64,000 nucleotides of DNA, taken from the IMG/VR virus record IMGVR_UViG_3300023174_000036, positions 248,001 through 312,000 of that record; one strand, 5' to 3'. The notes beneath the pieces were generated by a model. The model did not search any database and had not been told where the DNA came from. It saw nothing but the letters and a program-made list of their open reading frames with translations. The translations under genes were made by a program, and so were the position numbers. This document shows, one piece after another, positions 7,733-30,812 of the stretch (within the stretch, counting starts at the first letter, position 1; each line of letters begins with the position of its first letter).

Positions 7733-8354
7733 TTGCTGTATCTTTGCGTTTTAAAAACTTTCTTCCAGCCACATCAAATAAATCACCAGTGTACCAACCG
7801 TTTACAACACATTCGCCTTCATCTGTAAAATCAACATTGTAGTTCTTTTTAGGTTTAAAATCAAATGTTTCAGAATTAATACCCACAAATACAGGCGGCG
7901 GCATCTCAGTCATGCCATACCAGTTTGCCACACACTGCACTCCCCTATCTACAAACGAATCAATCATGGTTTGCGAACATGTGCCGCTTCCTGTTACCAT
8001 GTATCGAACACAACTCATATCAAAGTTTTCCCAGCCTTTGGTTTTTGATAACAACTCCCAGTGTTTTGGAATCAAACTAATGTATGTGGGTTGATATTTG
8101 TTGAATAGTTCAATATATGTGTACGGGTTGAAATTAGCTGATATCAGTTGGGCACCTGCAAGTTGTGCAGGCAATGCTGTAACTGTGAAGTGTGCTATAG
8201 TATTGCCAGGAAATACGTCTAATACCCGATCTTTGCTAGTTAACTTAATTTCTTTAACTGATTGCAATGCTCGATGATGTATAAACACCCAAGGATGCGT
8301 TATCTCTTTAGGTTCAGTAGTACTTCCTGAAGTGAATAAGATTAAATTGCTCAT
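7704..8354 (-). CDS. Short class I adenylate-forming (AMP-binding) enzyme
   Basis: ILFTSGSTTEPK (A3), YGMTE (A5), YTGDL (A7), R in A8; only 216 aa. Confidence 0.8.
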   Translation of the reverse strand: MSNLILFTSGSTTEPKEITHPWVFIHHRALQSVKEIKLTSKDRVLDVFPGNTIAHFTVTALPAQLAGAQLISANFNPYTYIELFNKYQPTYISLIPKHWELLSKTKGWENFDMSCVRYMVTGSGTCSQTMIDSFVDRGVQCVANWYGMTEMPPPVFVGINSETFDFKPKKNYNVDFTDEGECVVNGWYTGDLFDVAGRKFLKRKDTANGKTWKSNV

Positions 8355-9230: not shown

Positions 9231-9962
9231 TTATCCTATATGCATGGAAGTTTTTAAAAGTTTATCAATTGAATTTGCGGTTGGGTTGTTGTGTAACATT
9301 ATCCATGGGCTTGCGCTTTCATTGCGGGCCGCATGTTTAACTGCTGTGTTATACAAATAAACCCTGCCTTGTTCAAATGTATATTTACGATCCATATCTT
9401 CGCCAAATTTCCACCAGGCGTTGTCATCAATTTGAATTTGCAAATGCATCCTAATTAAAAATTCTGGATTTTGTATGTCCACATGAGTACGCAATCCCAC
9501 GTCTTGATTCATTTTTACCAAACGTGTTACTTCAAAACAATCCGGACCAAATGTATTATAATATGTTTCGTACATTCCAAACAAGTACTTTGGAAGATTC
9601 TTATTAAACTTTTTTTGAAAATCAGTGTCTGAGATTTCTGGAAATTGTGCTGGATCAGCAAGTTGCAAGAATGGAAGTTTTCCTGGTCTATCGTAAGACC
9701 ACTGAAGAGTCCACTGTAGTGGTTGCCCCCACACTAAATTATTTGGCATAAAAGACAGCGCAAATTCTTTTTTAGCTGGGTCGGCTAAATCCATATCATC
9801 CAGAGGGCTGTAACAACAATCGGCAAATTGTTCTTCTATGGCATTGAACCATTCCAACATTTTAGCAGAATCTACTGTGATGTTAGTTTGTATCACATCC
9901 CAGTCATAATTTTGAAGATCATCAAATGTATAATTTTCTGGATCTGTAATAAATCTATTCAT
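9231..9962 (-). CDS. Asp/Asn beta-hydroxylase-type 2OG-Fe(II) oxygenase
   Basis: LRTHVD...RMHLQI...KHAARN. Confidence 0.8.
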   Translation of the reverse strand: MNRFITDPENYTFDDLQNYDWDVIQTNITVDSAKMLEWFNAIEEQFADCCYSPLDDMDLADPAKKEFALSFMPNNLVWGQPLQWTLQWSYDRPGKLPFLQLADPAQFPEISDTDFQKKFNKNLPKYLFGMYETYYNTFGPDCFEVTRLVKMNQDVGLRTHVDIQNPEFLIRMHLQIQIDDNAWWKFGEDMDRKYTFEQGRVYLYNTAVKHAARNESASPWIMLHNNPTANSIDKLLKTSMHIG

Positions 9963-10023
9963 TAGAAAGCCCCTGTTGTAGGATATTTATTATCCTAACA
10001 TACAAGGGCTTTTAATTATGATA

Positions 10024-11277
10024 TTAGGCAGCTACTGATTTTACAACTGCAAAATTCAATACAGGAGCTTCAGCTACTGCAACTGCATTTGGAGTATAAA
10101 CACTGATTGTAAATGAATCCAATGCGGTATTAGTAACACTGACCATATGGAAGCCTGTGGCGGTTTTTACGCTTACTGATACCACATCAGTTGGATCAAC
10201 TATTGTGTTATTGACTGTGAATGTAGTCACTTGTCCAGCAGTGGCAGTTGTATTAAACAACGTGATAGTGCCGCATGGTGCATTGATAGTAACAGGAGTT
10301 GTTCTGCTAGTACCCTGCGATACAGCACTACCAGCACCTGTTCCGTAGCCAATACCAGCCGCTGAAATTTTAGATTTAGAAATAAACGCCGGGGCGGTCC
10401 ACACGCCTGGAGCAGTAAACTCGCTCAAATAAGCAGTTGCAAAATCATTTGGGGTATTGGGATTAACTAAAATAAATTGTAGTTTTCCCGAAGGTGCAAT
10501 GGTAGTGCCGTTACCCATGTTGGTTACATTGCCAACTATTCCAGCAACTGATGTAAAACCGTCCGAAGGAGCTACTGGAGTAGTTGTAAATCTTGCACGG
10601 AATTGTACTGCACCTAACCCGTCACCAACTTGCGAAATTTGTGGAGCTAACAATGTTCCACGCATTCCGCTGAATGACACGCCCTGAGTGAACGGCATTA
10701 TCTGTATGATATCCAATGACGGTTGTCCAGTATTTTGTGGACCAATTTGTACAACCTTTGCATCAGCACCGCCCAGCGAAAAAATAGTTGGGCCGTCAAT
10801 GGTGTTTGTATTTTGGCCGTTTATTTCAAGTTGGGTGCCAGTAAGTCTAGCTCCGGTAAGGTTAGCAGAAAATGTACCTGCTCCAGTGATATCAATGTTA
10901 CCTGTTCCTGTAATGCTTCGTGTATTTAAGTTTAAGTTTGAGCCTAATCCTGTGACAGACAACGTGCCGCTTACTGTGATACTACCTGTTCCGGTGATAT
11001 TTCTGTTGTTTAGATTTAAATTCCCGCCTAATGTTGGGTTAGTGTCTGCTTGTACACTTACAATACCCGTACCAGAACCGTTAAAGTCTAATCTCTGTGT
11101 AACGTTGTTCCAAACAAGTCCAGTGCCTGCACTAGATGCTAAGATGTTTTTGCCGCCAAGATTAACTCCGTCACCAACATATAGTTTATTGGTATCAGTA
11201 GTCCATACTATTTCACCCAAATCAAAGGCGGCGCTCGGTCTTTGAGCTTCTGTTCCTCGTCTAATACGTAGCGACAT
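10024..11277 (-). CDS. Tail fibre / virion fibre protein
   Basis: N-terminal LRIRRGT...LGEIVWTTDTNKLYVGDG (Mtd/hyaluronidase-type anchor); G/T/N-rich shaft with duplicated NLNLNxRxITGTG. Confidence 0.8.
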   Translation of the reverse strand: MSLRIRRGTEAQRPSAAFDLGEIVWTTDTNKLYVGDGVNLGGKNILASSAGTGLVWNNVTQRLDFNGSGTGIVSVQADTNPTLGGNLNLNNRNITGTGSITVSGTLSVTGLGSNLNLNTRSITGTGNIDITGAGTFSANLTGARLTGTQLEINGQNTNTIDGPTIFSLGGADAKVVQIGPQNTGQPSLDIIQIMPFTQGVSFSGMRGTLLAPQISQVGDGLGAVQFRARFTTTPVAPSDGFTSVAGIVGNVTNMGNGTTIAPSGKLQFILVNPNTPNDFATAYLSEFTAPGVWTAPAFISKSKISAAGIGYGTGAGSAVSQGTSRTTPVTINAPCGTITLFNTTATAGQVTTFTVNNTIVDPTDVVSVSVKTATGFHMVSVTNTALDSFTISVYTPNAVAVAEAPVLNFAVVKSVAA

Positions 11278-12029: not shown

Positions 12030-12635
12030 TTACATTGTGGGTCCGTTACCAGATTTAAATCCTACTGATCCGCCTTCTGCTTCAATGTTACGGATAACAT
12101 CTTCGAACAAGATAGGAGCAAAGTCCGGAGTTTGTTCCACGCATACGCAATGATAACGTGTATCGATATCGTCGCTGTAAAGGATTTCTCCAGTTCTAGC
12201 ATCAACTCCACGAGCCTTTTTCACACGATTTGCGTGTAAGTGTCCGTGAATGTTAACTCCAAAACGACCCATTGAATCTGAGTGTAACGGAATATGACTT
12301 AAGATCATTCCGTTCATAACGTGATAAGCTCTAAGTTCTCTAAAGTGGGCACGGTAGTCCTCATCTTTAAAGATATCGTGATTACCACGAATTAAAACTT
12401 TGTCTCCGTTAAGCCTACGCATGATTGCTAATGCTTTACGGTTGATCACAACATCGCCCAAATGGTACACCTTGTCAGTGGGCTTTACCCGTTCGTTCCA
12501 CGCCTTGACCATTGCTTCGTCCATTTCCTCAGCGGAGTCCCAAGGACGAAGTTTTGTAACACCATCGTTACGTGTGAAGCGGCATACACCTGTGTGTCCA
12601 AAGTGCGTGTCGCTTACTAAGAATACACTTGGCAT
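12030..12635 (-). CDS. Calcineurin-like metallophosphoesterase
   Basis: SDTHFGH, LGDV, GNHD, SHIP, HGHLH motifs. Confidence 0.9.
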   Translation of the reverse strand: MPSVFLVSDTHFGHTGVCRFTRNDGVTKLRPWDSAEEMDEAMVKAWNERVKPTDKVYHLGDVVINRKALAIMRRLNGDKVLIRGNHDIFKDEDYRAHFRELRAYHVMNGMILSHIPLHSDSMGRFGVNIHGHLHANRVKKARGVDARTGEILYSDDIDTRYHCVCVEQTPDFAPILFEDVIRNIEAEGGSVGFKSGNGPTM

Positions 12636-12650
12636 ATTATGCTCCTTTCT

Positions 12651-12824
12651 TTAATAAGTTTCTTTTACAATATTATACTCTTCGGCGGGCCATTTGGCCT
12701 TAAATTCATCAGACTTTACATACTCATTAAATGATTTAGCATCAAAAAACATTTTATGAAACTCTGTTTTCATTGAACCTTTTTTGGTTACTGTTAAGTA
12801 AACCGATTTTGCTTTGCCAGCCAT
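12651..12824 (-). CDS. Small hypothetical protein (57 aa, MAGKAKSVYL...)
   Basis: Translated by eye; AAGG SD upstream; fills the intergenic gap. Confidence 0.6.
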   Translation of the reverse strand: MAGKAKSVYLTVTKKGSMKTEFHKMFFDAKSFNEYVKSDEFKAKWPAEEYNIVKETY

Positions 12825-12850
12825 TGAGTACCTTTCTTGTTTAAGTAGTT

Positions 12851-12879
12851 ATTATACTACTTATTCCGCAATCAGTCAA
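12851..12879 (-). promoter_or_regulatory. Sigma70-like promoter TTGACT-N17-TATAAT
   Basis: Direct motif match. Confidence 0.75.
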
Positions 12880-13339
12880 CCGACCTAAAAGTTCGCCAAT
12901 CATCAATGTTTGGCTTTTCGTCCGTATCATAGGTCCATCCTAAAGCCTTCATCATACGATGTTTGACTAGCAGGTTAGGACTACGGAAACGTTCCGTATC
13001 GTTGAATCCCATCATAACACCAACTTCACAAACCGCACCCGATCTGCAAACGCCAGCATAGCAATGAACCACTACATTCATACGATTTTCCAATGCATGT
13101 TGTAGCAAACGAACTAACTCTGCGGCCTGCTCATGACTACATTTCATTGTTTCCTCTAGCACGGAATCTTTTTCTTCTACATCCAAGAACTCAAAATTGT
13201 GACGCTCTTTGAACTGATGTTTAGGTTCAGGTCGCCAGCTAGCTGGATCAACAATACTGATCAACATGCTATTAGGGCCAGCATCGTGATGAAATCCTGT
13301 TGGAATATCAGCGGCGGCCACATTTTCAATCCAAGGCAT
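12872..13339 (-). CDS. Cys-dependent (PTP-like) phosphatase
   Basis: VVVHCYAGVCRS (HCx5R). Confidence 0.8.
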   Translation of the reverse strand: MPWIENVAAADIPTGFHHDAGPNSMLISIVDPASWRPEPKHQFKERHNFEFLDVEEKDSVLEETMKCSHEQAAELVRLLQHALENRMNVVVHCYAGVCRSGAVCEVGVMMGFNDTERFRSPNLLVKHRMMKALGWTYDTDEKPNIDDWRTFRSVD

Positions 13340-13348
13340 AATGCCTCC

Positions 13349-13594
13349 TTATCTTTTCATTCGTTCGCTTGCAATTTGACAATCAATGCACATCTTGCAA
13401 CCTTTGACTGCTAGTTGTCTTGCTTTGGGAATTTCTTCTCCACATTCATCGCAATGACTTAAACTAGGGCCTGTGGGCAATGCCGCCCTAATCCTTGCTA
13501 CTGCATCAGCGTTCGCAGTAGTTGATAACAGCTGAGCCATATCGGATTCTTCTAAGTTGTCGCCTTGAATGCTTTCATACTCTCTAATGGTCAT
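13349..13594 (-). CDS. TraR/DksA-family C4 zinc finger protein
   Basis: CDECGEEIPKARQLAVKGCKMCIDCQ; N-terminal EESDMA resembles DxxDxA. Confidence 0.85.
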   Translation of the reverse strand: MTIREYESIQGDNLEESDMAQLLSTTANADAVARIRAALPTGPSLSHCDECGEEIPKARQLAVKGCKMCIDCQIASERMKR

Positions 13595-13603
13595 AATTTT
13601 TCC

Positions 13604-14065
13604 TTAAACAAACCAAATTTCTTCAAAACCTTCTTTGTTGGTAGGTTCTTCCCAATTGTCAATCATACCTTGTACAACTTCCCAAGGCACATCTTTACCT
13701 GGCCTGCTGGCTAAACGTTCTTTAAGAACGTCTACTGGCGGTGTACGGAACACAACTGCAATGTGCTTGTAATTTGGAAGCATATTAAACTTCCTAGCAC
13801 GACTTTTAACTGTGGTGCTAGTCTGATCCCAAATTACAGTATGTTCATGATCACGTGCAAATACTACTTGTTGAGCCATTAATTCTACTGCTGTAGGCAT
13901 ATAATCCTTAAACACTTCTGTGTAAGTCTTACCCCGTGTCTTTGCATAATCTTCTACAAACGGATCGGTACTGACCACAGTCAAACCCAAAGCCCAAATT
14001 TGATCTTTGATCCAAGTGCTTTTGCCTGCGGCAGGAACGCCAATTAACTGATAGCATACGGGCAT
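13604..14065 (-). CDS. P-loop kinase (AAA_33 / polynucleotide kinase-like)
   Basis: GVPAAGKST Walker A, IWDQT, RLASR lid. Confidence 0.8.
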   Translation of the reverse strand: MPVCYQLIGVPAAGKSTWIKDQIWALGLTVVSTDPFVEDYAKTRGKTYTEVFKDYMPTAVELMAQQVVFARDHEHTVIWDQTSTTVKSRARKFNMLPNYKHIAVVFRTPPVDVLKERLASRPGKDVPWEVVQGMIDNWEEPTNKEGFEEIWFV

Positions 14066-14351: not shown

Positions 14352-15764
14352 TTACAACTTGTAACGATCACTCATTACAGTCTTAAGCATGATGCCTTCT
14401 GGAGTGAATTGATCCATGTCAGCGGCTAGCAAGCTAGTCATGATTGATGGACTGAATCCACTTACCAATGCGGCACCACTCTTGTCTGCCTTAACAGGTA
14501 CGTTATCTGAACTGTTTAGGTTCCAGAAAACAATCTGTGGCACGCTGTAGCCTGCGGCTTCGAACTTGCGTTCGATCATTTCCATTGCGCTGTCGTCGTA
14601 ACGGGCGCATTGGTTGAACTGCATGTCTGACAAGATCAGCAACATGGCTGGCATGTCGCTAGCTGGTACTGAACCCTTAACCGCAACGTCTAGGATCTTG
14701 TCCATAGCCGCATGTAGATTAGTGCTCATGTCCCAATCACTCTTGCTCATTTGAGCAACCTTATCAACAATGTTACCCTTTAGAGTAACAAGTTGTGGCT
14801 TGTCTGAGAAAGTCAAGAATGTGTCCTTGAACACGCCCTTGTTCTTGTCTGCTAGGTACAAGCCCAAGCTGATTGAAACATCCATGCAAGTTACATTAGT
14901 GTTCTTTCCTGCTGGGCAAGACATAGAACCGCTAACGTCTACGATTGGCATGATGCTAGCATCTCCAACGTAGTTTGGCAAGCTGTCCCATTGTGCGATC
15001 ACATGGTCAGTTTCTGTCTTGTCAAACTTTGCACGGTAGCTACCGATCACGCCCTTAAGGACATCGTGTGGGAAAATTGCCGAAGCATTAACCTTCACTG
15101 ATGGATCCTTAGCAATCAGAGCCGCAACATACTCAGCGAATGCTGGGCTGTGACGGTTGAAAGCCTTCTTGTAGATTCGAGAAGCTACAGAAGGAACGTG
15201 ACTGAAGTTGATGTTATCCCAATCTCCTGCACACATTTGGGTTTCAACAACCTTTGTAAGTGCCACAAGGCTTTTACGATATTGCTTTGGAGTCATGCCA
15301 AAGAAGGCACGAACTTCAGCGGCAATTTGACCCTTACGAGGAGTCCACTTTGCGGCCAAACCGTTGTTAGCACGAAGGGCATCACCCAACATGGTATAAG
15401 CGGCTGACTTCAGCACTGGGTTTGAGAAGACAAAGATGTCATCCCAACGGCCCACTTCTGGAACCTTCTTCAACAGGGCCAAAGCGGCGTCTGGGTCACG
15501 CTTTTCTAGGTGTACTAGAATGTCGCGGAACAGTTGACGTTCACCTGCGCCACCACGGACATCACGTGCCCATTGTGCGATGCGTAGTGCAACGTCTTGA
15601 TTTTCCACATAAGCGGCAGTGAAGTCGCCTGTGATGTCCTTACCACGGCTTGCGCCAATGTTATAGAACAAGTCAACACAAGCCGAAGCTGTTGACTTAC
15701 GTGCCTTCATACCGTTTGCGGTACGGGCTTCTTGATTTGCTACTGCTGTTACAAATGCGTTCAT
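14352..15764 (-). CDS. DUF2828-family TROVE/VWA (Ro60-like) protein
   Basis: RDVRGGAGERQLF, GRWDD, AAKWTPR, INFSHVPSVA, MIDAS DVSGS, ILSDMQF, IVFWNL, VSGFS motifs. Confidence 0.85.
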   Translation of the reverse strand: MNAFVTAVANQEARTANGMKARKSTASACVDLFYNIGASRGKDITGDFTAAYVENQDVALRIAQWARDVRGGAGERQLFRDILVHLEKRDPDAALALLKKVPEVGRWDDIFVFSNPVLKSAAYTMLGDALRANNGLAAKWTPRKGQIAAEVRAFFGMTPKQYRKSLVALTKVVETQMCAGDWDNINFSHVPSVASRIYKKAFNRHSPAFAEYVAALIAKDPSVKVNASAIFPHDVLKGVIGSYRAKFDKTETDHVIAQWDSLPNYVGDASIMPIVDVSGSMSCPAGKNTNVTCMDVSISLGLYLADKNKGVFKDTFLTFSDKPQLVTLKGNIVDKVAQMSKSDWDMSTNLHAAMDKILDVAVKGSVPASDMPAMLLILSDMQFNQCARYDDSAMEMIERKFEAAGYSVPQIVFWNLNSSDNVPVKADKSGAALVSGFSPSIMTSLLAADMDQFTPEGIMLKTVMSDRYKL

Positions 15765-15778
15765 TTTAATTACCTTTA

Positions 15779-15835
15779 CAGAATGTGTTGTTTTTCGATT
15801 ATAAGTGAAAAATTGAATTTGCTGTTAACATTCTA
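15779..15835 (-). ncRNA. Y-like ncRNA copy 1 (57 nt, ACAGCAA family; loop CUUAUAA)
   Basis: TAGAATGT-TA-ACAGCAA...ACATTCTG; stem covaries with copies 2 and 3. Confidence 0.65.
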
Positions 15836-15842
15836 AATTTAA

Positions 15843-16008
15843 CAGGATCGTTGTTGACTGCTTTTATTTTACTCAGGCCATCACTCTGAGCTCGTTAGTC
15901 TTGTTTCAATAGTTGCCTTCAACGCTCGGTGTTTTTACGCACTCTACTCCACCAACTACCACAGTGTCTAACAATCCATAGTATATGAATGTTGCTGTAC
16001 CGATCCTA
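15843..16008 (-). ncRNA. Y-like ncRNA copy 2 (166 nt, ACAGCAA family)
   Basis: TAGGATCG-GT-ACAGCAA...CGATCCTG with internal hairpins. Confidence 0.65.
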
Positions 16009-16101: not shown

Positions 16102-16178
16102 TGGAGTGGGTGACAGGACTCGAACCTGCATGGAACGGATTTGCAATCCGGGGCCTAACCATTCAGCGGCACACCCAC
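16102..16178 (-). tRNA. tRNA-Cys(GCA)
   Basis: Cloverleaf, U73, encoded CCA. Confidence 0.95.
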
Positions 16179-24894: not shown

Positions 24895-24986
24895 TGGTAC
24901 CAGCGGAGGGGATCGAACCCTCTCAAGAACGCTAATCTGGCGCTAAAAGTCTTATAAGGACTCTCTGACTACCAAGTCTCGCTGGC
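24895..24986 (-). tRNA. Atypical tRNA with TAT anticodon (Ile by anticodon), long variable arm, reduced D arm
   Basis: GCCAGCG/CGCTGGT-A-CCA, loop CT-TAT-AA, 92 nt. Confidence 0.75.
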
Positions 24987-26304: not shown

Positions 26305-26379
26305 TGGTGGTAATAGTAGGATTTGAACCTACACCTTGCTCCGTATGAAGGAGGTGCACTACCGTTATGCTATATTACC
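26305..26379 (-). tRNA. tRNA(CAT): elongator Met or Ile2
   Basis: Loop TT-CAT-AC, G1-C72, CCA; identity not decidable by eye. Confidence 0.85.
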
Positions 26380-26380
26380 A

Positions 26381-26481
26381 TATGTAAACACACTAAGGTG
26401 TATTAAGTATGCGGGCTATGCCTATCGCAGTGACTGGGATACCAAACCTGATCTTTTTACAGATTAAAGTATGTTTACATA
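26381..26481 (-). ncRNA. Stem-capped small RNA D
   Basis: TATGTAAACATACT...AGTGTGTTTACATA terminal stem between two tRNAs. Confidence 0.4.
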
Positions 26482-26556
26482 TGGTAGGGGCACAGGGAAT
26501 CGAACCCTGATAGACTGGTTAAAAGCCAGCTATTCTAGCCGTTGAATTATACCCCC
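26482..26556 (-). tRNA. tRNA-Lys(TTT)
   Basis: Loop CT-TTT-AA, CCA. Confidence 0.95.
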
Positions 26557-26560
26557 ATAT

Positions 26561-26636
26561 TGGTCCACTCAGTCGGATTCGAACCGACACCTCATTGATT
26601 AAGAGTCAAGTGCGCTACCATTAACGCTACAAGTGG
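26561..26636 (-). tRNA. tRNA-Lys(CTT)
   Basis: Loop CT-CTT-AA, CCA. Confidence 0.95.
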
Positions 26637-26747
26637 TTGGTCGTAATTAAATTGATTTAATGTGCCAACCAGGACCAATACGGGGTCTAGATTGACACTA
26701 ACGTTTAGCACGTTTCATGTCGTTCTCCTTATGAACATTTTTAAAAA

Positions 26748-26804
26748 CAGGATGCTTATTTTTCAATTAAAAGTTGAATTTTTGAATTTGCTGTTCGCAT
26801 CCTA
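26748..26804 (-). ncRNA. Y-like ncRNA copy 3 (57 nt, ACAGCAA family; Lys(UUU)-like anticodon arm)
   Basis: TAGGATGC-GA-ACAGCAA...TTCAA-CTTTTAA-TTGAA...GCATCCTG. Confidence 0.65.
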
Positions 26805-26808
26805 AACT

Positions 26809-26883
26809 TGGTACTCCGAACGGGTTTCGATCCCGCTTCTCCAACTTGAAAGGCTGGCGTCCTAGCCACTAGACGACCGGAGT
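26809..26883 (-). tRNA. tRNA-Glu(TTC) copy 2
   Basis: Loop CT-TTC-AA, CCA; sequence divergent from copy 1. Confidence 0.9.
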
Positions 26884-26888
26884 ATATT

Positions 26889-26963
26889 TGGTAGCCAATG
26901 ATGGGAACGATCCATCGACCCTCGCCTTATCAAGACGATGCTCTACCACTGAGCTAATTGGCT
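26889..26963 (-). tRNA. tRNA-Ile(GAT)
   Basis: Cloverleaf, CCA. Confidence 0.95.
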
Positions 26964-26968
26964 ATATT

Positions 26969-27044
26969 TGGTGGAGGTGACAGGGATCGAACCTGCGACA
27001 TCTTGCTTGCAAAGCAAACGCTCTCCCAACTGAGCTACACCCCC
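26969..27044 (-). tRNA. tRNA-Ala(TGC)
   Basis: G3:U70, CCA. Confidence 0.95.
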
Positions 27045-27052
27045 ATATTATA

Positions 27053-27802
27053 TTATTTGATGGAGTTTATTTTAACTAGACCAAAAAATTTCAAAATTAA
27101 AATTATCCCATACGCCAGATCAAATTCCCACCATTTTTCTGAAAATTTAGCTTTAGTGGTATCATCATGATGGTTGGCAGCCAACTCTTCGCCGACGTAC
27201 AGCAGTCCTATAGGAAACATGTTCCGAGAACGATCAGCGCCTTTGGCTGGCCTATTTCGATATCCTATTGTGTGACTTAGATAGTTATGCGCACGAAGAT
27301 GGAACTGTGTATATACAAACAAGATAACACCAAATACCACTCCCCATATACCAAACGCAATTAAAGCCAAAATTCCTGCTATTGGATATCTATATTTAGA
27401 ATACTTTACTAATTGATGTTCTAGTTTATCAGTGTATACAGGCACATCGTTACCCCATTTTTCAATTTCCTCAGGAGTCAAATAGTACGCTGGAGTAGCT
27501 GGAGATGGCTCTTGAGTGAAAAACAAATCTATTTTACTGAAGTAAATTGGACTGTGTGGATCATCCGGTGTGTCAGAAGTAGCATGATGCTTTCTATGAC
27601 CCGCAACAAATGCACGGACAGAATCACCAGGATACCAAAAACCTATAAACCATAACCATGTTCTAGAAAAATATTCTAATCTAGTACTTACTATAGAAAC
27701 TGATCGATGGGCCAATATTCTATGAATATAAATTGCATAAACATTGCAAGTTATGAAAAAAATTGTTAGATAACACCACAACATCCACTGATAATCAAGC
27801 AT
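27053..27802 (-). CDS. Membrane fatty acid (acyl-CoA/acyl-lipid) desaturase
   Basis: His boxes HRILAH, HRKHH, NHH; DPHSP; FDL. Confidence 0.85.
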   Translation of the reverse strand: MLDYQWMLWCYLTIFFITCNVYAIYIHRILAHRSVSIVSTRLEYFSRTWLWFIGFWYPGDSVRAFVAGHRKHHATSDTPDDPHSPIYFSKIDLFFTQEPSPATPAYYLTPEEIEKWGNDVPVYTDKLEHQLVKYSKYRYPIAGILALIAFGIWGVVFGVILFVYTQFHLRAHNYLSHTIGYRNRPAKGADRSRNMFPIGLLYVGEELAANHHDDTTKAKFSEKWWEFDLAYGIILILKFFGLVKINSIK

Positions 27803-28026: not shown

Positions 28027-28112
28027 TGGTGGAGTATCCTGGGATCGAACCAGGCGTGCCATTACGACGGCGGATTTACAGTCCACTGCATCACCATTGA
28101 TGCTTCTACTCC
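28027..28112 (-). tRNA. tRNA-Tyr(GTA)
   Basis: Long variable arm, CCA. Confidence 0.95.
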
Positions 28113-30154: not shown

Positions 30155-30225
30155 AATATAATTCCTTTTAAAATAATGACATTTGTCATGCTTATAGTAT
30201 ACATTAGTACTATCTATAGGTCAAG

Positions 30226-30250
30226 AAAAAAGGCACTCGAAAGTGCCTTC
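30226..30250 (-). terminator. Terminator after tmRNA
   Basis: AAGGCACT-TTCG-AGTGCCTTTTTT. Confidence 0.85.
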
Positions 30251-30592
30251 TTTGGTTATTGGTTTACAAGGCTAACCAGCCCCGGAGTTGCGGTTTCTTA
30301 GGCCGCCATTGCAAAGTCTGCATCATTAGCTGAAAAAGCTACTGAAGCTGGAACTTTGAAATACTCGAATGTATTTGCGTTTGCATTTACGAGTTTTGCT
30401 TGATTTACAGTCATCGCCTACTGAGTTGCCGTCTCCATTATCTCACCCTGTCGAAACCATGGCTGGCCCATCATAAACACATTAATGAGGAATCTAGGCG
30501 GATTGCAAGACCCAATGATTAATATGTTTATGGTGGACCAGGTGGGAGTCGAACCCACGTCCAGAATGCCTTCACTTTGAAGGGATTACAAC
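30251..30592 (-). ncRNA. ssrA: Circularly permuted (two-piece) tmRNA
   Basis: Acceptor piece with T arm and CCA at 30531-30592; hairpin intervening segment 30470-30530; coding piece starts GGGCCAG at 30469 (G3:U70); tag ORF 30384-30298. Confidence 0.9.
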
Positions 30593-30608
30593 TATCTCTT
30601 TAACCACA

Positions 30609-30812
30609 TTACTGTGGTTGAATATTTGCTGCCTGCAAGCCTTTTTGACCTTGTACTACATCAAATGATACTGATTGATTCTCTTGCAGAACTTTGAATC
30701 CTGATGTCTGAATCGCTGAGTAGTGAGCAAACAAATCCTCACCACCGTTGTCTGGAGTAATAAACCCAAAACCTTTGGTTTCATTAAACCATTTTACTTT
30801 ACCTGTTGCCAT
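30609..30812 (-). CDS. cspA: Cold-shock protein
   Basis: [15 protein letters not shown] (RNP1), DLFAHYS (RNP2). Confidence 0.95.

What the first reader, a model, noticed from the sequence alone, without database searches (positions are those of the whole stretch)
26748..26804. Y-like RNAs carry anticodon stem-loop mimics of tRNA-Lys(UUU) and tRNA-Ile(UAU)
Seen: copy 3 contains TTCAA-CTTTTAA-TTGAA, a 5-bp stem with a 7-nt loop identical to the anticodon loop of the phage tRNA-Lys(TTT) at 26482-26556. Copy 1 is also 57 nt and has CTTATAA at the same place, identical to the loop of the atypical TAT tRNA at 24895-24986 (its stem needs one bulged C). The two loops differ only at the middle anticodon base. 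Established: tRNA-Lys(UUU) is the target of anti-phage anticodon nucleases such as PrrC and PARIS AriB. Inference: Ro-tethered anticodon decoys or sensors that titrate host tRNA-cleaving defences.
Basis: partly seen in the sequence, partly recalled or inferred. Interest (0 to 1): 0.85.

Follow-up and report, generated by a model that had tools for sequence, protein, structure and literature searches.

The report
Phage Ro-partner RNAs mimicking anticodon arms
A jumbo phage encodes, inside its tRNA gene array, a small RNA of a large undescribed family partnered with a Ro60-like protein, whose tip copies the anticodon arm of lysine tRNA and may bait host enzymes that attack tRNAs.

Summary
The lysine half of the interpretation survives a comparative test; the isoleucine half does not.

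**What the element is.** The 57-nt element at 26804→26748 (minus strand) belongs to a large RNA family with no Rfam match: 226 covariance-model hits and 142 distinct sequences in related viral contigs. Members also occur in cultured Pseudomonas, Ralstonia, Synechococcus, Cronobacter and E. coli phages.

**Architecture.**
- A covarying 8-bp terminal stem.
- An invariant (A/U)ACAGCAA internal-loop motif.
- A covarying 5-bp apical stem.

**Copy-3 class (80 distinct sequences).** 62 have a 7-nt loop and 47 read exactly CUNNNAA. Positions 33, 37 and 38 are conserved and 34-36 vary. UUU (Lys) dominates, on seven different stems. Background hairpins in the window match CUNNNAA at 0.6%.

**Copy-1 class (42 distinct sequences).** Loops are mostly 9 nt (A-N-N-CAUAU-C). 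The UAU "Ile" loop occurs only in the window's own variant.

**Protein partner.** The adjacent DUF2828 protein is predicted to fold like Ro60.

**Context.** The RNAs lie in tRNA arrays, always on the tRNA strand.

**Function.** Acting as a decoy for anticodon nucleases is plausible but untested. This is a new variant of Y-RNA tRNA mimicry.

The parts
26748..26804 (-). Copy 3: short class A Y-like RNA (57 nt) with an apical mimic of the tRNA-Lys(UUU) anticodon arm
   Evidence: R1 covariance model, 74.7 bits, E 2.7e-13. Identical or near-identical copies occur in L053, L107, L142, L154, L159 and L195.
26797..26804 (-). 5' strand of the 8-bp terminal stem (UAGGAUGC); pairs with 26748-26755 (GCAUCCUG)
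   Evidence: 99% of cells are paired, and 4 of 8 pairs show changes on both sides, in a MAFFT alignment made independently of structure.
26788..26795 (-). Invariant AACAGCAA motif in the 5' side of the internal loop; probable protein-binding site (inferred)
   Evidence: These columns are invariant in the 40-sequence seed alignment. The motif is retained as ACAGCA(A) in Cronobacter phage S13, Pseudomonas phage Milchi and E. coli phage VpaE1, and as GCAGCAA in cyanophage BUCT-ZZ01.
26762..26778 (-). Anticodon-arm mimic: UUCAA / CUUUUAA / UUGAA (loop at 26767-26773)
   Evidence: All 5 stem pairs covary. For loop statistics. Relatives sharing copy 3's 3' internal loop (AAAUAA) keep CUUUUAA on the stems UUCAA/UUGAA, UUAGA/UCUAA and UUUCA/UGAAA.
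15779..15835 (-). Copy 1: short class B Y-like RNA, ending 14 nt before the DUF2828 start codon. The loop ACUUAUAAUC is not a conserved anticodon mimic.
   Evidence: R1, 62.3 bits. Class B loops are mostly 9 nt, e.g. AAGCAUAUC.
15843..16008 (-). Copy 2: long (166 nt) member with the same terminal stem and GUACAGCAAC motif; interior structure unresolved
   Evidence: Sequence read. A consensus fold (RNAalifold) of 37 homologues of 155-172 nt found little beyond the terminal stem.
14352..15764 (-). DUF2828/DUF7788 protein (470 aa), predicted to fold like Ro60; the presumed protein partner
   Evidence: Pfam hits. PHROG 850, 'RNA-binding protein'. AlphaFold2 model with pLDDT 91. The top 7 Foldseek PDB hits are all Ro60, E from 3.8e-7 to 1e-4.
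26305..27044 (-). tRNA array in which copy 3 is embedded: Ala, Ile, Glu, copy 3, Lys(CUU), Lys(UUU), Met
   Evidence: ARAGORN and Rfam. Copy 3 starts 4 nt after tRNA-Glu. A promoter-like site lies at 27075→27047; it is a consensus match only.
26482..26556 (-). Phage tRNA-Lys(UUU), whose loop CUUUUAA is copied by copy 3; its anticodon stem (GCUGG/CCAGU) is unrelated
12030..14065 (-). Genes just downstream of DUF2828: a kinase resembling polynucleotide kinase, a DksA-like zinc-finger protein, a dual-specificity phosphatase and a metallophosphoesterase. Together they could heal broken RNA ends.
   Evidence: Pfam and PHROGs. A kinase and a phosphoesterase also follow DUF2828 in Stenotrophomonas phage DLP_6 and Ralstonia phage RSP15.

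Best explanation
**Shown.**
- It lies on the tRNA strand inside a tRNA array.
- It folds into an 8-bp terminal stem, an asymmetric internal loop with an invariant (A/U)ACAGCAA motif, and an apical 5-bp stem with a 7-nt loop.
- In this class the apical hairpin evolves under the constraints of a tRNA anticodon arm: an A31-U39 closing pair, C32, U33, free 34-36, and A37 A38. In the window it carries the tRNA-Lys(UUU) loop.

**Inferred.**
- The RNA is made as part of the tRNA transcript and cut out by tRNA-processing enzymes.
- DUF2828 binds the stem and ACAGCAA region, as Ro60 binds the Y RNA stem, and stabilises the weak AU-rich hairpin.
- The particle displays the anticodon arm to a factor that reads anticodon loops.
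- The most likely partner is a host tRNA-cleaving defence nuclease, which the RNA would occupy or sequester as a decoy. The phage's own, differently stemmed tRNAs would keep translation going.
- Related phages carry panels with different triplets (Lys, Arg UCU, Thr, Cys, Tyr, Asn, Ser).

**Copy 1.** It belongs to a different class and is more likely a leader element or partner RNA of the DUF2828 gene than an Ile mimic.
For: **Family and fold.**
- R1 gives 226 hits and 142 distinct sequences.
- 95% of cells are paired, against 36-45% when the partners are slid, and all 5 apical pairs covary.

**Anticodon-loop constraint.**
- 62 of 80 class A sequences have 7-nt loops and 47 are CUNNNAA.
- Information content is 1.54, 1.33 and 1.52 bits at positions 33, 37 and 38, against 0.57-0.84 bits at 34-36.
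- Background hairpins match CU...AA at 0.6%.
- UUU sits on 7 different stem pairs.
- UUU persists in phages whose DUF2828 is under 50% identical to the window's: cyanophage BUCT-ZZ01 (UUUCAA-CUUUUAC-UUGAAA) and Pseudomonas phage Milchi (UUUGA-CUUUUAA-UCAAA).
- UUU is about 40% of the mimics but 2.3% of the 909 distinct phage tRNAs.
- The loops equal those of the cognate phage tRNAs.
- One variant matches the E. coli tRNA-Lys anticodon arm at 15 of 17 positions.

**Long relatives.**
- They are circularly permuted tRNA-like RNAs.
- In L034 the Rfam tRNA model aligns the hairpin as anticodon arm, variable loop and T arm.

**Context.**
- All 209 hits that have a tRNA in the locus share the strand of the nearest tRNA, and 92 lie within 15 nt of one.

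**Protein.**
- Predicted Ro60 fold.

**Literature.**
- AriB cleaves Lys UUU, Thr UGU and Asn GUU at U36AAUC|A41 and needs U39 (PMC12409363).
- gp130 of the Felixounavirus Bas63 is reported as structurally Ro60-like and counters the Ppl defence system (PMC11482910). E. coli Felixounaviruses encode DUF2828 proteins about 36% identical to the window's.
Against: - No expression, binding or cleavage data exist for any member.
- The window's apical helix is barely stable alone. Only 32 of 66 class A members show it in their minimum-energy fold.
- 18 of 80 class A sequences have loops of other sizes (2-17 nt).
- Ralstonia phage RSP15 members have C33.
- The short RNAs in E. coli phage VpaE1 are not anticodon-like.
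- RNAs at the same genomic position differ by single loop bases (UUU versus UGU in L179 and L181). Some triplet variation could therefore be drift.
- AriB also contacts the D loop (PMC12409363), which these RNAs lack.
- The host and its defence systems are unknown.
- So many tRNA-targeting nucleases are known that an overlap of targets is weak evidence.
Confidence: 0.4

Rival explanations
1. Tether model, as for classical Y RNAs. The anticodon arm recruits a tRNA-binding enzyme to the Ro-like particle. Candidates are a repair, modification or aminoacylation enzyme, or an exonuclease such as PNPase. The complex would carry out quality control or repair of phage or host tRNAs rather than inhibit a defence nuclease.
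For: - Ro60-Y RNA particles tether PNPase, and YrlA mimics tRNA (PMC4201824).
- Thermus phage phiLo Ro60 and its Y-like RNAs assemble with host PNPase (PMC12135203).
- DUF2828 is followed by a kinase resembling polynucleotide kinase and by phosphoesterases here and in two cultured phages.
- Long relatives carry T-arm, acceptor and D-arm modules. One hits the Rfam YrlA model at 33.6 bits.
Against: - No RNA ligase was found next to the gene in the window.
- A panel of different triplets dominated by Lys UUU is not obviously needed for a general tether.
Confidence: 0.27
2. The 7-nt CUNNNAA loop is simply a U-turn hairpin that DUF2828 itself, or RNA folding, requires. The likeness to anticodon loops reflects descent from a tRNA-like ancestor and has no present role as a mimic.
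For: - Long relatives are permuted tRNA-like RNAs, so the short forms may be reduced versions.
- The middle triplet changes by single bases between RNAs at the same genomic position.
- Some members have 3-5-nt loops.
Against: - UUU is kept across seven stem variants and across DUF2828 proteins under 50% identical. This argues for selection on the triplet itself.
- The triplets are confined to those ending in U or A, which is also what A37 A38 accompanies in real tRNAs.
Confidence: 0.17
3. Copy 1 only: a leader element in the 5' untranslated region of DUF2828. It would be a class B partner RNA that may allow the protein to control its own translation. It is not an Ile(UAU) mimic.
For: - It ends 14 nt before the start codon, with the ribosome-binding site AAAGG directly after the stem.
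- This class always sits at that position in the loci.
- Its loops are mostly 9 nt with an A-N-N-CAUAU-C consensus. Only the window's own variant yields CUUAUAA.
Against: - Autoregulation is inferred from position only.
- The class shares the stem and ACAGCAA motif with class A, so it may equally be a processed trans-acting RNA.
Confidence: 0.5
4. AT-rich coincidence: the anticodon-like loop has no constraint behind it.
For: The region is AT-rich, and 10% of background hairpins in the window fit Y-U-NNN-R.
Against: - 47 of 62 7-nt loops are CUNNNAA, against 0.6% in the background.
- The stems covary while the loop flanks stay fixed.
Confidence: 0.03
5. A minimal decoding tRNA without D and T arms, like the armless mitochondrial tRNAs, that is charged and used in translation.
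For: The layout, a 7-8-bp terminal stem plus an anticodon arm, resembles armless tRNAs.
Against: - There is no CCA or discriminator context; the conserved tail is GUU.
- ARAGORN and the Rfam tRNA model do not call it.
- The phage already encodes cognate full tRNAs.
Confidence: 0.03

Closest known systems
Bacterial YrlA / Y RNAs with Ro60 (Rsr) (Rfam RF02553; Chen et al. 2014, PMC4201824)
   Same: - Small RNAs encoded beside a Ro60-fold protein, closed by a 5'/3' stem, with a tRNA-mimicking module.
- Several paralogues per genome, including short hairpin forms (YrlB, Yrn2).
- The long relatives here share the T-arm, closed acceptor and D-arm core (33.6-bit YrlA hit).
   Different: - The protein is DUF2828/DUF7788, not Pfam TROVE.
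- The conserved motif is (A/U)ACAGCAA, not GNCGAAN0-1G.
- No Rfam Y RNA or YrlA hit falls on the window copies.
- YrlA has no separate anticodon arm; as I recall, the Y stem takes that position. Here the anticodon arm is the displayed module, and in short forms the only one.
- The genes are scattered through tRNA arrays.
Thermus phage phiLo Ro60 with Yrl1/Yrl2 (PMC12135203; PDB 9L5Y)
   Same: A phage Ro60-fold protein (the best Foldseek hit) with Y-like RNAs encoded upstream of its gene. The authors propose it hijacks host RNA machinery to escape defence.
   Different: Those RNAs carry the CGAA motif and bind PNPase. No anticodon-arm mimic and no tRNA-array context are reported.
Phage tRNAs that escape anticodon nucleases (T5 tRNA-Lys, Thr and Asn against PARIS AriB; PMC11464382, PMC12409363)
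   Same: - An RNA-level phage answer to tRNA cleavage, centred on Lys UUU, Thr UGU and Asn GUU.
- The authors note that over-expressed viral tRNAs might also inhibit AriB by competition.
   Different: Those are full, functional tRNAs altered to resist cleavage. Here the RNA is only an anticodon arm on a Ro-partner scaffold, it keeps U39, and it cannot decode.
Bas63 gp130, a Ro60-like anti-defence gene (PMC11482910)
   Same: - A Ro60-fold protein encoded next to a phage tRNA array.
- It probably belongs to the same DUF2828 family, since E. coli Felixounavirus proteins are about 36% identical to the window's.
- ACAGCAA-motif RNAs lie downstream of the gene in the related phage VpaE1.
- It is experimentally needed against the Ppl defence system.
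   Different: - Bas63 itself was not fetched.
- The short VpaE1 RNAs are not anticodon-like.
- The paper proposes that Ppl degrades DNA.
Armless mitochondrial tRNAs
   Same: A terminal stem plus an anticodon arm, with loops replacing the D and T arms.
   Different: A resemblance of shape only; nothing suggests these RNAs are charged or decode.

Membership tests
Y RNA / YrlA (Ro60-associated RNAs) | Encoded close to, and on the same strand as, a Ro60 orthologue | tested here: met
   Copies 1 and 2 lie directly upstream of a protein with a predicted Ro60 fold. Copy 3 lies 11 kb away on the same strand. The protein is DUF2828, not Pfam TROVE.
Y RNA / YrlA (Ro60-associated RNAs) | Stem formed by the 5' and 3' ends, next to an internal loop or bulge | tested here: met
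   8-bp terminal stem with covariation.
Y RNA / YrlA (Ro60-associated RNAs) | Ro-binding motif GNCGAAN0-1G (bacterial) or GGUCCGA bulged helix (animal) | tested here: not met
   The conserved motif is (A/U)ACAGCAA. Copy 3 reads UGCGAAC, which does not fit GNCGAA, and most members have CUAACAGCAA.
Y RNA / YrlA (Ro60-associated RNAs) | Match to the Rfam covariance models RF00019 or RF02553 | tested here: not met
   No hit on the window copies at E≤10. A long relative, L034, reaches 33.6 bits against a gathering score of 69.
Y RNA / YrlA (Ro60-associated RNAs) | Physical binding to the Ro protein | not testable with these tools
   Needs immunoprecipitation or a gel-shift assay.
tRNA anticodon stem-loop (structural motif) | 5-bp stem | tested here: met
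   All five pairs show changes on both sides; 88-89% of cells are paired.
tRNA anticodon stem-loop (structural motif) | 7-nt loop | tested here: met
   62 of 80 distinct class A sequences, but only 7 of 42 class B sequences.
tRNA anticodon stem-loop (structural motif) | Y32, U33 and R37 conserved, with 34-36 variable | tested here: met
   52 of 62 fit Y-U-NNN-R. U33 occurs in 57 of 62 and A37 in 55 of 62. Information is lowest at 34-36. Exceptions are the C33 members in Ralstonia phage RSP15.
tRNA anticodon stem-loop (structural motif) | Copy 1 specifically: the Ile(UAU) loop conserved among homologues | tested here: not met
   1 of 42 distinct class B sequences.
tRNA (RF00005) | Cloverleaf with D and T arms and an acceptor end | tested here: not met
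   Neither ARAGORN nor the Rfam tRNA model calls 26748-26804 or 15779-15835.
Anti-defence decoy RNA against anticodon nucleases | Bound or cleaved by an anticodon nuclease and protective in vivo | not testable with these tools
   Only correlative support: the triplets include the AriB targets and U39 is retained (PMC12409363).

The most novel reading that the evidence does not exclude
tRNA-rich phages from many host phyla carry a modular library of RNAs bound by a Ro60-like protein. Each RNA displays a piece of a tRNA: an anticodon arm alone, an arm plus a T arm, or a whole circularly permuted tRNA. The anticodon-arm members would form an RNA decoy panel that neutralises, or reports on, host nucleases that cut specific tRNAs. 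That would be a general RNA-based counter-defence working alongside phage tRNA genes.
Probability: 0.3. Interest if true: 0.9.

Novelty: new variant of a known kind. Interest (0 to 1): 0.78.

Why it matters
- **An unanswered question about phage tRNA arrays.** tRNA cleavage is now recognised as a widespread anti-phage strategy. Phage tRNA arrays are being re-read as counter-measures.
- **An overlooked component.** These arrays also hold a conserved, unannotated class of small RNAs tied to a Ro60-like protein. That protein occurs in over 700 sequenced phages, including Felix O1-like, KVP40-like, Listeria P100-like, staphylococcal and mycobacterial phages.
- **A clear structural signal.** A subclass is under the constraints of an anticodon loop.
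- **A testable function.** This gives the Ro60-like protein family a concrete hypothesis. In the one phage tested (Bas63), a protein probably of this family is already known to counter a defence system.
- **Extension of a known principle.** It carries Y-RNA tRNA mimicry over to the anticodon arm.
- **Usable model systems.** Culturable phages that carry such RNAs include Pseudomonas phage Milchi, Synechococcus phage BUCT-ZZ01 and Ralstonia phage RSP15.

Tried and rejected
- **Rfam.** At gathering and at E≤10 there is no Y RNA or YrlA hit on the window copies. Only chance-level Dictyostelium Class I RNA hits appear (E 1-2).
- **Sequence search of DUF2828 against PDB chains.** The single sequence found nothing. 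The profile gave only E≈0.04 hits to TROVE/Ro60. The relationship needed the fold search.
- **Do mimics sit next to their cognate tRNA gene?** In 6 of 56 contexts, against 3.1 expected. Not convincing.
- **Minimum-energy folding of copy 3.** It does not predict the anticodon-like helix. The structure rests on covariation.
- **Copy 2 (166 nt).** A consensus fold (RNAalifold) of 37 homologues found no convincing interior structure and no T arm.
- **Mini-ORF after copy 3 (MKRAKR, with a ribosome-binding site).** A related one occurs only in L195. Other relatives have a tRNA there.
- **Vibrio phage KVP40 locus.** No model hit.
- **E. coli phage VpaE1.** It has ACAGCAA-motif RNAs, but the short ones are not anticodon-like.
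- **Binomial P value.** It ignores the relatedness of the sequences, so I do not rely on it. The argument rests on independent stem variants and on distant phages.

Full report
**Setting.** The window matches IMG/VR contig IMGVR_UViG_3300023174_000036, a 356-kb jumbo phage, with 100% protein identity at locus L001. About 29 tRNA genes and a two-piece tmRNA lie on the minus strand between 16.1 and 30.6 kb.

- On the minus strand, 26804→26748 reads UAGGAUGC GAACAGCAAAUUCAAAAA UUCAA CUUUUAA UUGAA AAAUAA GCAUCCUG.
- The loop equals that of the phage tRNA-Lys(UUU) at 26482-26556.
- Copy 1 (15835→15779) is also 57 nt and carries CUUAUAA, the loop of the 92-nt tRNA-Ile(UAU). It needs a bulged C to give a 7-nt loop.
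- A 166-nt copy 2 (16008→15843) shares the stem and motif.
- Of 1178 other potential 5-bp/7-nt hairpins in the window outside the tRNAs, 0.6% are CU...AA and none is CUUUUAA.

**A large RNA family.**
- A scan of viral contigs for DUF2828 relatives, plus a motif scan, yielded 196 loci.
- A 40-sequence MAFFT alignment (A1) has invariant AACAGCAA columns.
- On that alignment, made independently of structure, the two-helix model pairs 95% of cells, against 36-45% when partners are slid. Changes on both sides occur in 4 of 8 outer pairs and in 5 of 5 apical pairs. The same result holds on 95 distinct model-aligned sequences.
- The covariance model R1 finds only the two short copies in the window. 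It finds 226 matches in the loci, 142 of them distinct.
- Rfam has no family for them.

The short members fall into two classes.
- *Class A, to which copy 3 belongs (80 distinct).*
  - 62 have a 7-nt loop, 52 fit Y32-U33-NNN-R37 and 47 are exactly CUNNNAA.
  - Information is high at positions 33, 37 and 38 (1.3-1.5 bits) and lowest at 34-36 (0.6-0.8 bits).
  - The closing pair is nearly always A31-U39.
  - The triplets are UUU (on seven different stem pairs), GCA, UCU, GUA, CUU, UGU, GUU, GCU, UGA, CGA and UCA.
  - Relatives sharing copy 3's 3' internal loop (AAAUAA) keep CUUUUAA while the stem changes among UUCAA/UUGAA, UUAGA/UCUAA and UUUCA/UGAAA.
  - The loops are identical to those of the cognate phage tRNAs. 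All 21 distinct tRNA-Lys(UUU) genes have CUUUUAA.
  - The tRNA stems are GC-rich and unrelated to the mimic stems.
  - UUU makes up 2.3% of the tRNAs but about 40% of the mimics.
  - One variant, UUUGA-CUUUUAA-UCAAA, matches the E. coli lysT anticodon arm at 15 of 17 positions.
- *Class B, to which copy 1 belongs (42 distinct).*
  - It always lies just upstream of the DUF2828 start codon.
  - Loops are mostly 9 nt with consensus A-N-N-CAUAU-C.
  - Only the window's own variant gives CUUAUAA.
  - The Ile(UAU) reading is therefore not supported.

**Long relatives tie the hairpin to the anticodon arm.**
- Members of 120-138 nt are circularly permuted tRNA-like RNAs. Their order is hairpin, short variable stretch, T arm (GGUUCGAAUCC), a closed acceptor hairpin and a D arm.
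- For L034, the Rfam tRNA model aligns UCGC-CUUAAAA-GCGA, AUGGU and the T arm as anticodon arm, variable loop and T arm. The YrlA model matches the T, acceptor and D core at 33.6 bits, below its gathering score.
- Several long forms carry 7-nt loops of the same kind in that hairpin: CUUCUAA, CUGAUAA and CUUGAAA.

**Genomic context.**
- All 209 hits that have a tRNA in the locus lie on the strand of the nearest tRNA, and 92 lie within 15 nt of one.
- Copy 3 starts 4 nt after tRNA-Glu and precedes the two tRNA-Lys genes.
- A promoter-like site lies upstream of tRNA-Ala. It is a consensus match only and such sites are not enriched.
- Co-transcription with the tRNAs, and release by tRNA-processing enzymes, is an inference.
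- Adjacency to the cognate tRNA gene is not significant.

**The protein.**
- ORF 14352-15764 carries the Pfam domains DUF7788 and DUF2828.
- Its AlphaFold2 model (pLDDT 91, pTM 0.90) matches only Ro60 structures at E≤1e-4. These are Thermus phage phiLo, Xenopus, Deinococcus and human Ro60, with TM-scores of about 0.4-0.6.
- Relatives occur in 706 phage records. In the loci fetched, the gene lies beside or near tRNA genes.
- In the window, downstream genes encode a kinase resembling polynucleotide kinase and two phosphoesterases.

**Cultured phages carry the RNAs too.**

| Phage | Locus and coordinates | What is there |
|---|---|---|
| Synechococcus phage BUCT-ZZ01 | L197 5833-5901 | Short RNA with UUUCAA-CUUUUAC-UUGAAA, between a long member and a mid-sized one, just upstream of its DUF2828 gene |
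| Pseudomonas phage Milchi | L205 11290-11825 | Four tandem members; one with UUUGA-CUUUUAA-UCAAA lies directly before tRNA-Lys |
| Ralstonia phage RSP15 | L204 | Three members, two with C33 (CCGUUAA, CCUUAAC) |
| Cronobacter phage S13 | L199 about 8153-8292 | Long member with a T arm |
| E. coli phage VpaE1 | L207 9715-10500 | ACAGCAA-motif RNAs; the short ones are not anticodon-like |

**Mechanism.**
- *Shown:* the fold, the anticodon-loop constraint, the tRNA-array context and the Ro60-like neighbour.
- *Inferred:* DUF2828 binds the stem and ACAGCAA region and presents the arm.
- *My preferred reading (0.4):* the RNA is a decoy or sequestering bait for host nucleases that target anticodon arms.
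  - The library of papers supports plausibility only. AriB cuts Lys UUU, Thr UGU and Asn GUU at U36AAUC|A41 and requires U39 (PMC12409363). The mimics keep U39.
  - gp130 of the Felixounavirus Bas63 is reported as structurally Ro60-like and counters the Ppl defence system (PMC11482910). E. coli Felixounaviruses encode DUF2828 proteins about 36% identical to the window's.
- *Main rival (0.27):* a Y-RNA-style tether that recruits a tRNA-handling enzyme. Support comes from the phiLo Ro60-Yrl-PNPase complex (PMC12135203) and the neighbouring end-healing genes.
- *Third reading (0.17):* the hairpin is a structural leftover of a tRNA-like ancestor.

**Weak points.**
- The AU-rich helix is marginal on its own.
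- There are exceptions in loop size and at position 33.
- Single-base triplet changes occur between RNAs at the same genomic position.
- There are no experimental data at all.

**Novelty.**
- Full-text searches found no description of DUF2828-associated RNAs or of anticodon-arm mimicry by Y-like RNAs.
- The closest hints are speculation that some Bas63 'tRNA genes' might be Y RNAs (PMC11482910), and that abundant RNAs of a Listeria phage might be Y RNAs (PMC12282133).
- I file the element as a new variant of Y-RNA tRNA mimicry, not as a member of YrlA. The defining motif and the Rfam model were both tested and not met.

Noticed in passing
window 30207-30644 (-): The phage encodes a two-piece (circularly permuted) tmRNA. 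ARAGORN reads the tag peptide as ANANTFEYFKVPASVAFSANDADFAMAA. It matches the Rfam families tmRNA_permuted and beta_tmRNA.
   Followed up: no
window 26702-26722 (-): A mini-ORF with a strong ribosome-binding site lies directly after copy 3 (AAGGAGAACGAC-ATG AAA CGT GCT AAA CGT TAG, peptide MKRAKR) and just before the two tRNA-Lys genes. L195 has a related MKRSSAKL ORF; other relatives have a tRNA there instead.
   Followed up: partly
window 24895-24986 (-): tRNA-Ile(UAU) is 92 nt long, with an extra-long region after the anticodon arm. Relatives have the same oddity (for example L174 3025-3120, 96 nt).
   Followed up: no
window 16105-16178 (-) and 28030-28112 (-): Two tRNA genes are found by the Rfam tRNA model but missed by ARAGORN. 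The first has a UUGCAAA loop (Cys GCA).
   Followed up: no
L034 1637-1758; L162 4285-4407; L196 383-517; L184 3180-3300: Long family members are whole circularly permuted tRNA mimics inserted in the Ro-partner stem. Their order is anticodon arm, variable stretch, T arm, closed acceptor hairpin, D arm.
   Followed up: partly
L199 7896-8138 (Cronobacter phage S13): Two annotated 'tRNAs' of 121 and 113 nt carry an inserted element in the anticodon region (CAAACUGAyAAGUUUG followed by UAUUCAGCA). Its UUCAGCA recalls a variant of the family motif. Similar 114-nt 'pseudo-tRNAs' are annotated in Aeromonas phage Ahp1 and Citrobacter phage Ci1.
   Followed up: no
L207 9715-10500 (E. coli phage vB_EcoM-VpaE1): Four unannotated RNAs of the form CAGAAGACC..UUACAGCAAA...GGUCUGGU lie between the tRNA genes downstream of the DUF2828 gene of a Felix O1-like phage. 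Unannotated tRNA-like sequences lie at 9801-9876 and 9958-10037.
   Followed up: partly
window 12030-14065 (-); L202 8609-11013; L204 12702-14627: DUF2828 is repeatedly followed by a P-loop kinase resembling polynucleotide kinase and by metallophosphoesterases, a possible RNA end-healing set. No RNA ligase was seen nearby in the window.
   Followed up: partly
window 7154-27802: The tRNA region is interleaved with many oxygenase and radical-enzyme genes. These include several 2OG-Fe(II) oxygenases, two Asp/Arg hydroxylase-like proteins, a B12-binding radical SAM protein, a SAM methyltransferase and a fatty-acid desaturase-like protein. They could be RNA- or protein-modifying enzymes.
   Followed up: no
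window 15765-15790 (-): The class B RNA ends 14 nt before the DUF2828 start codon, with the ribosome-binding site AAAGG immediately after its stem. This suggests the protein might control its own translation.
   Followed up: no
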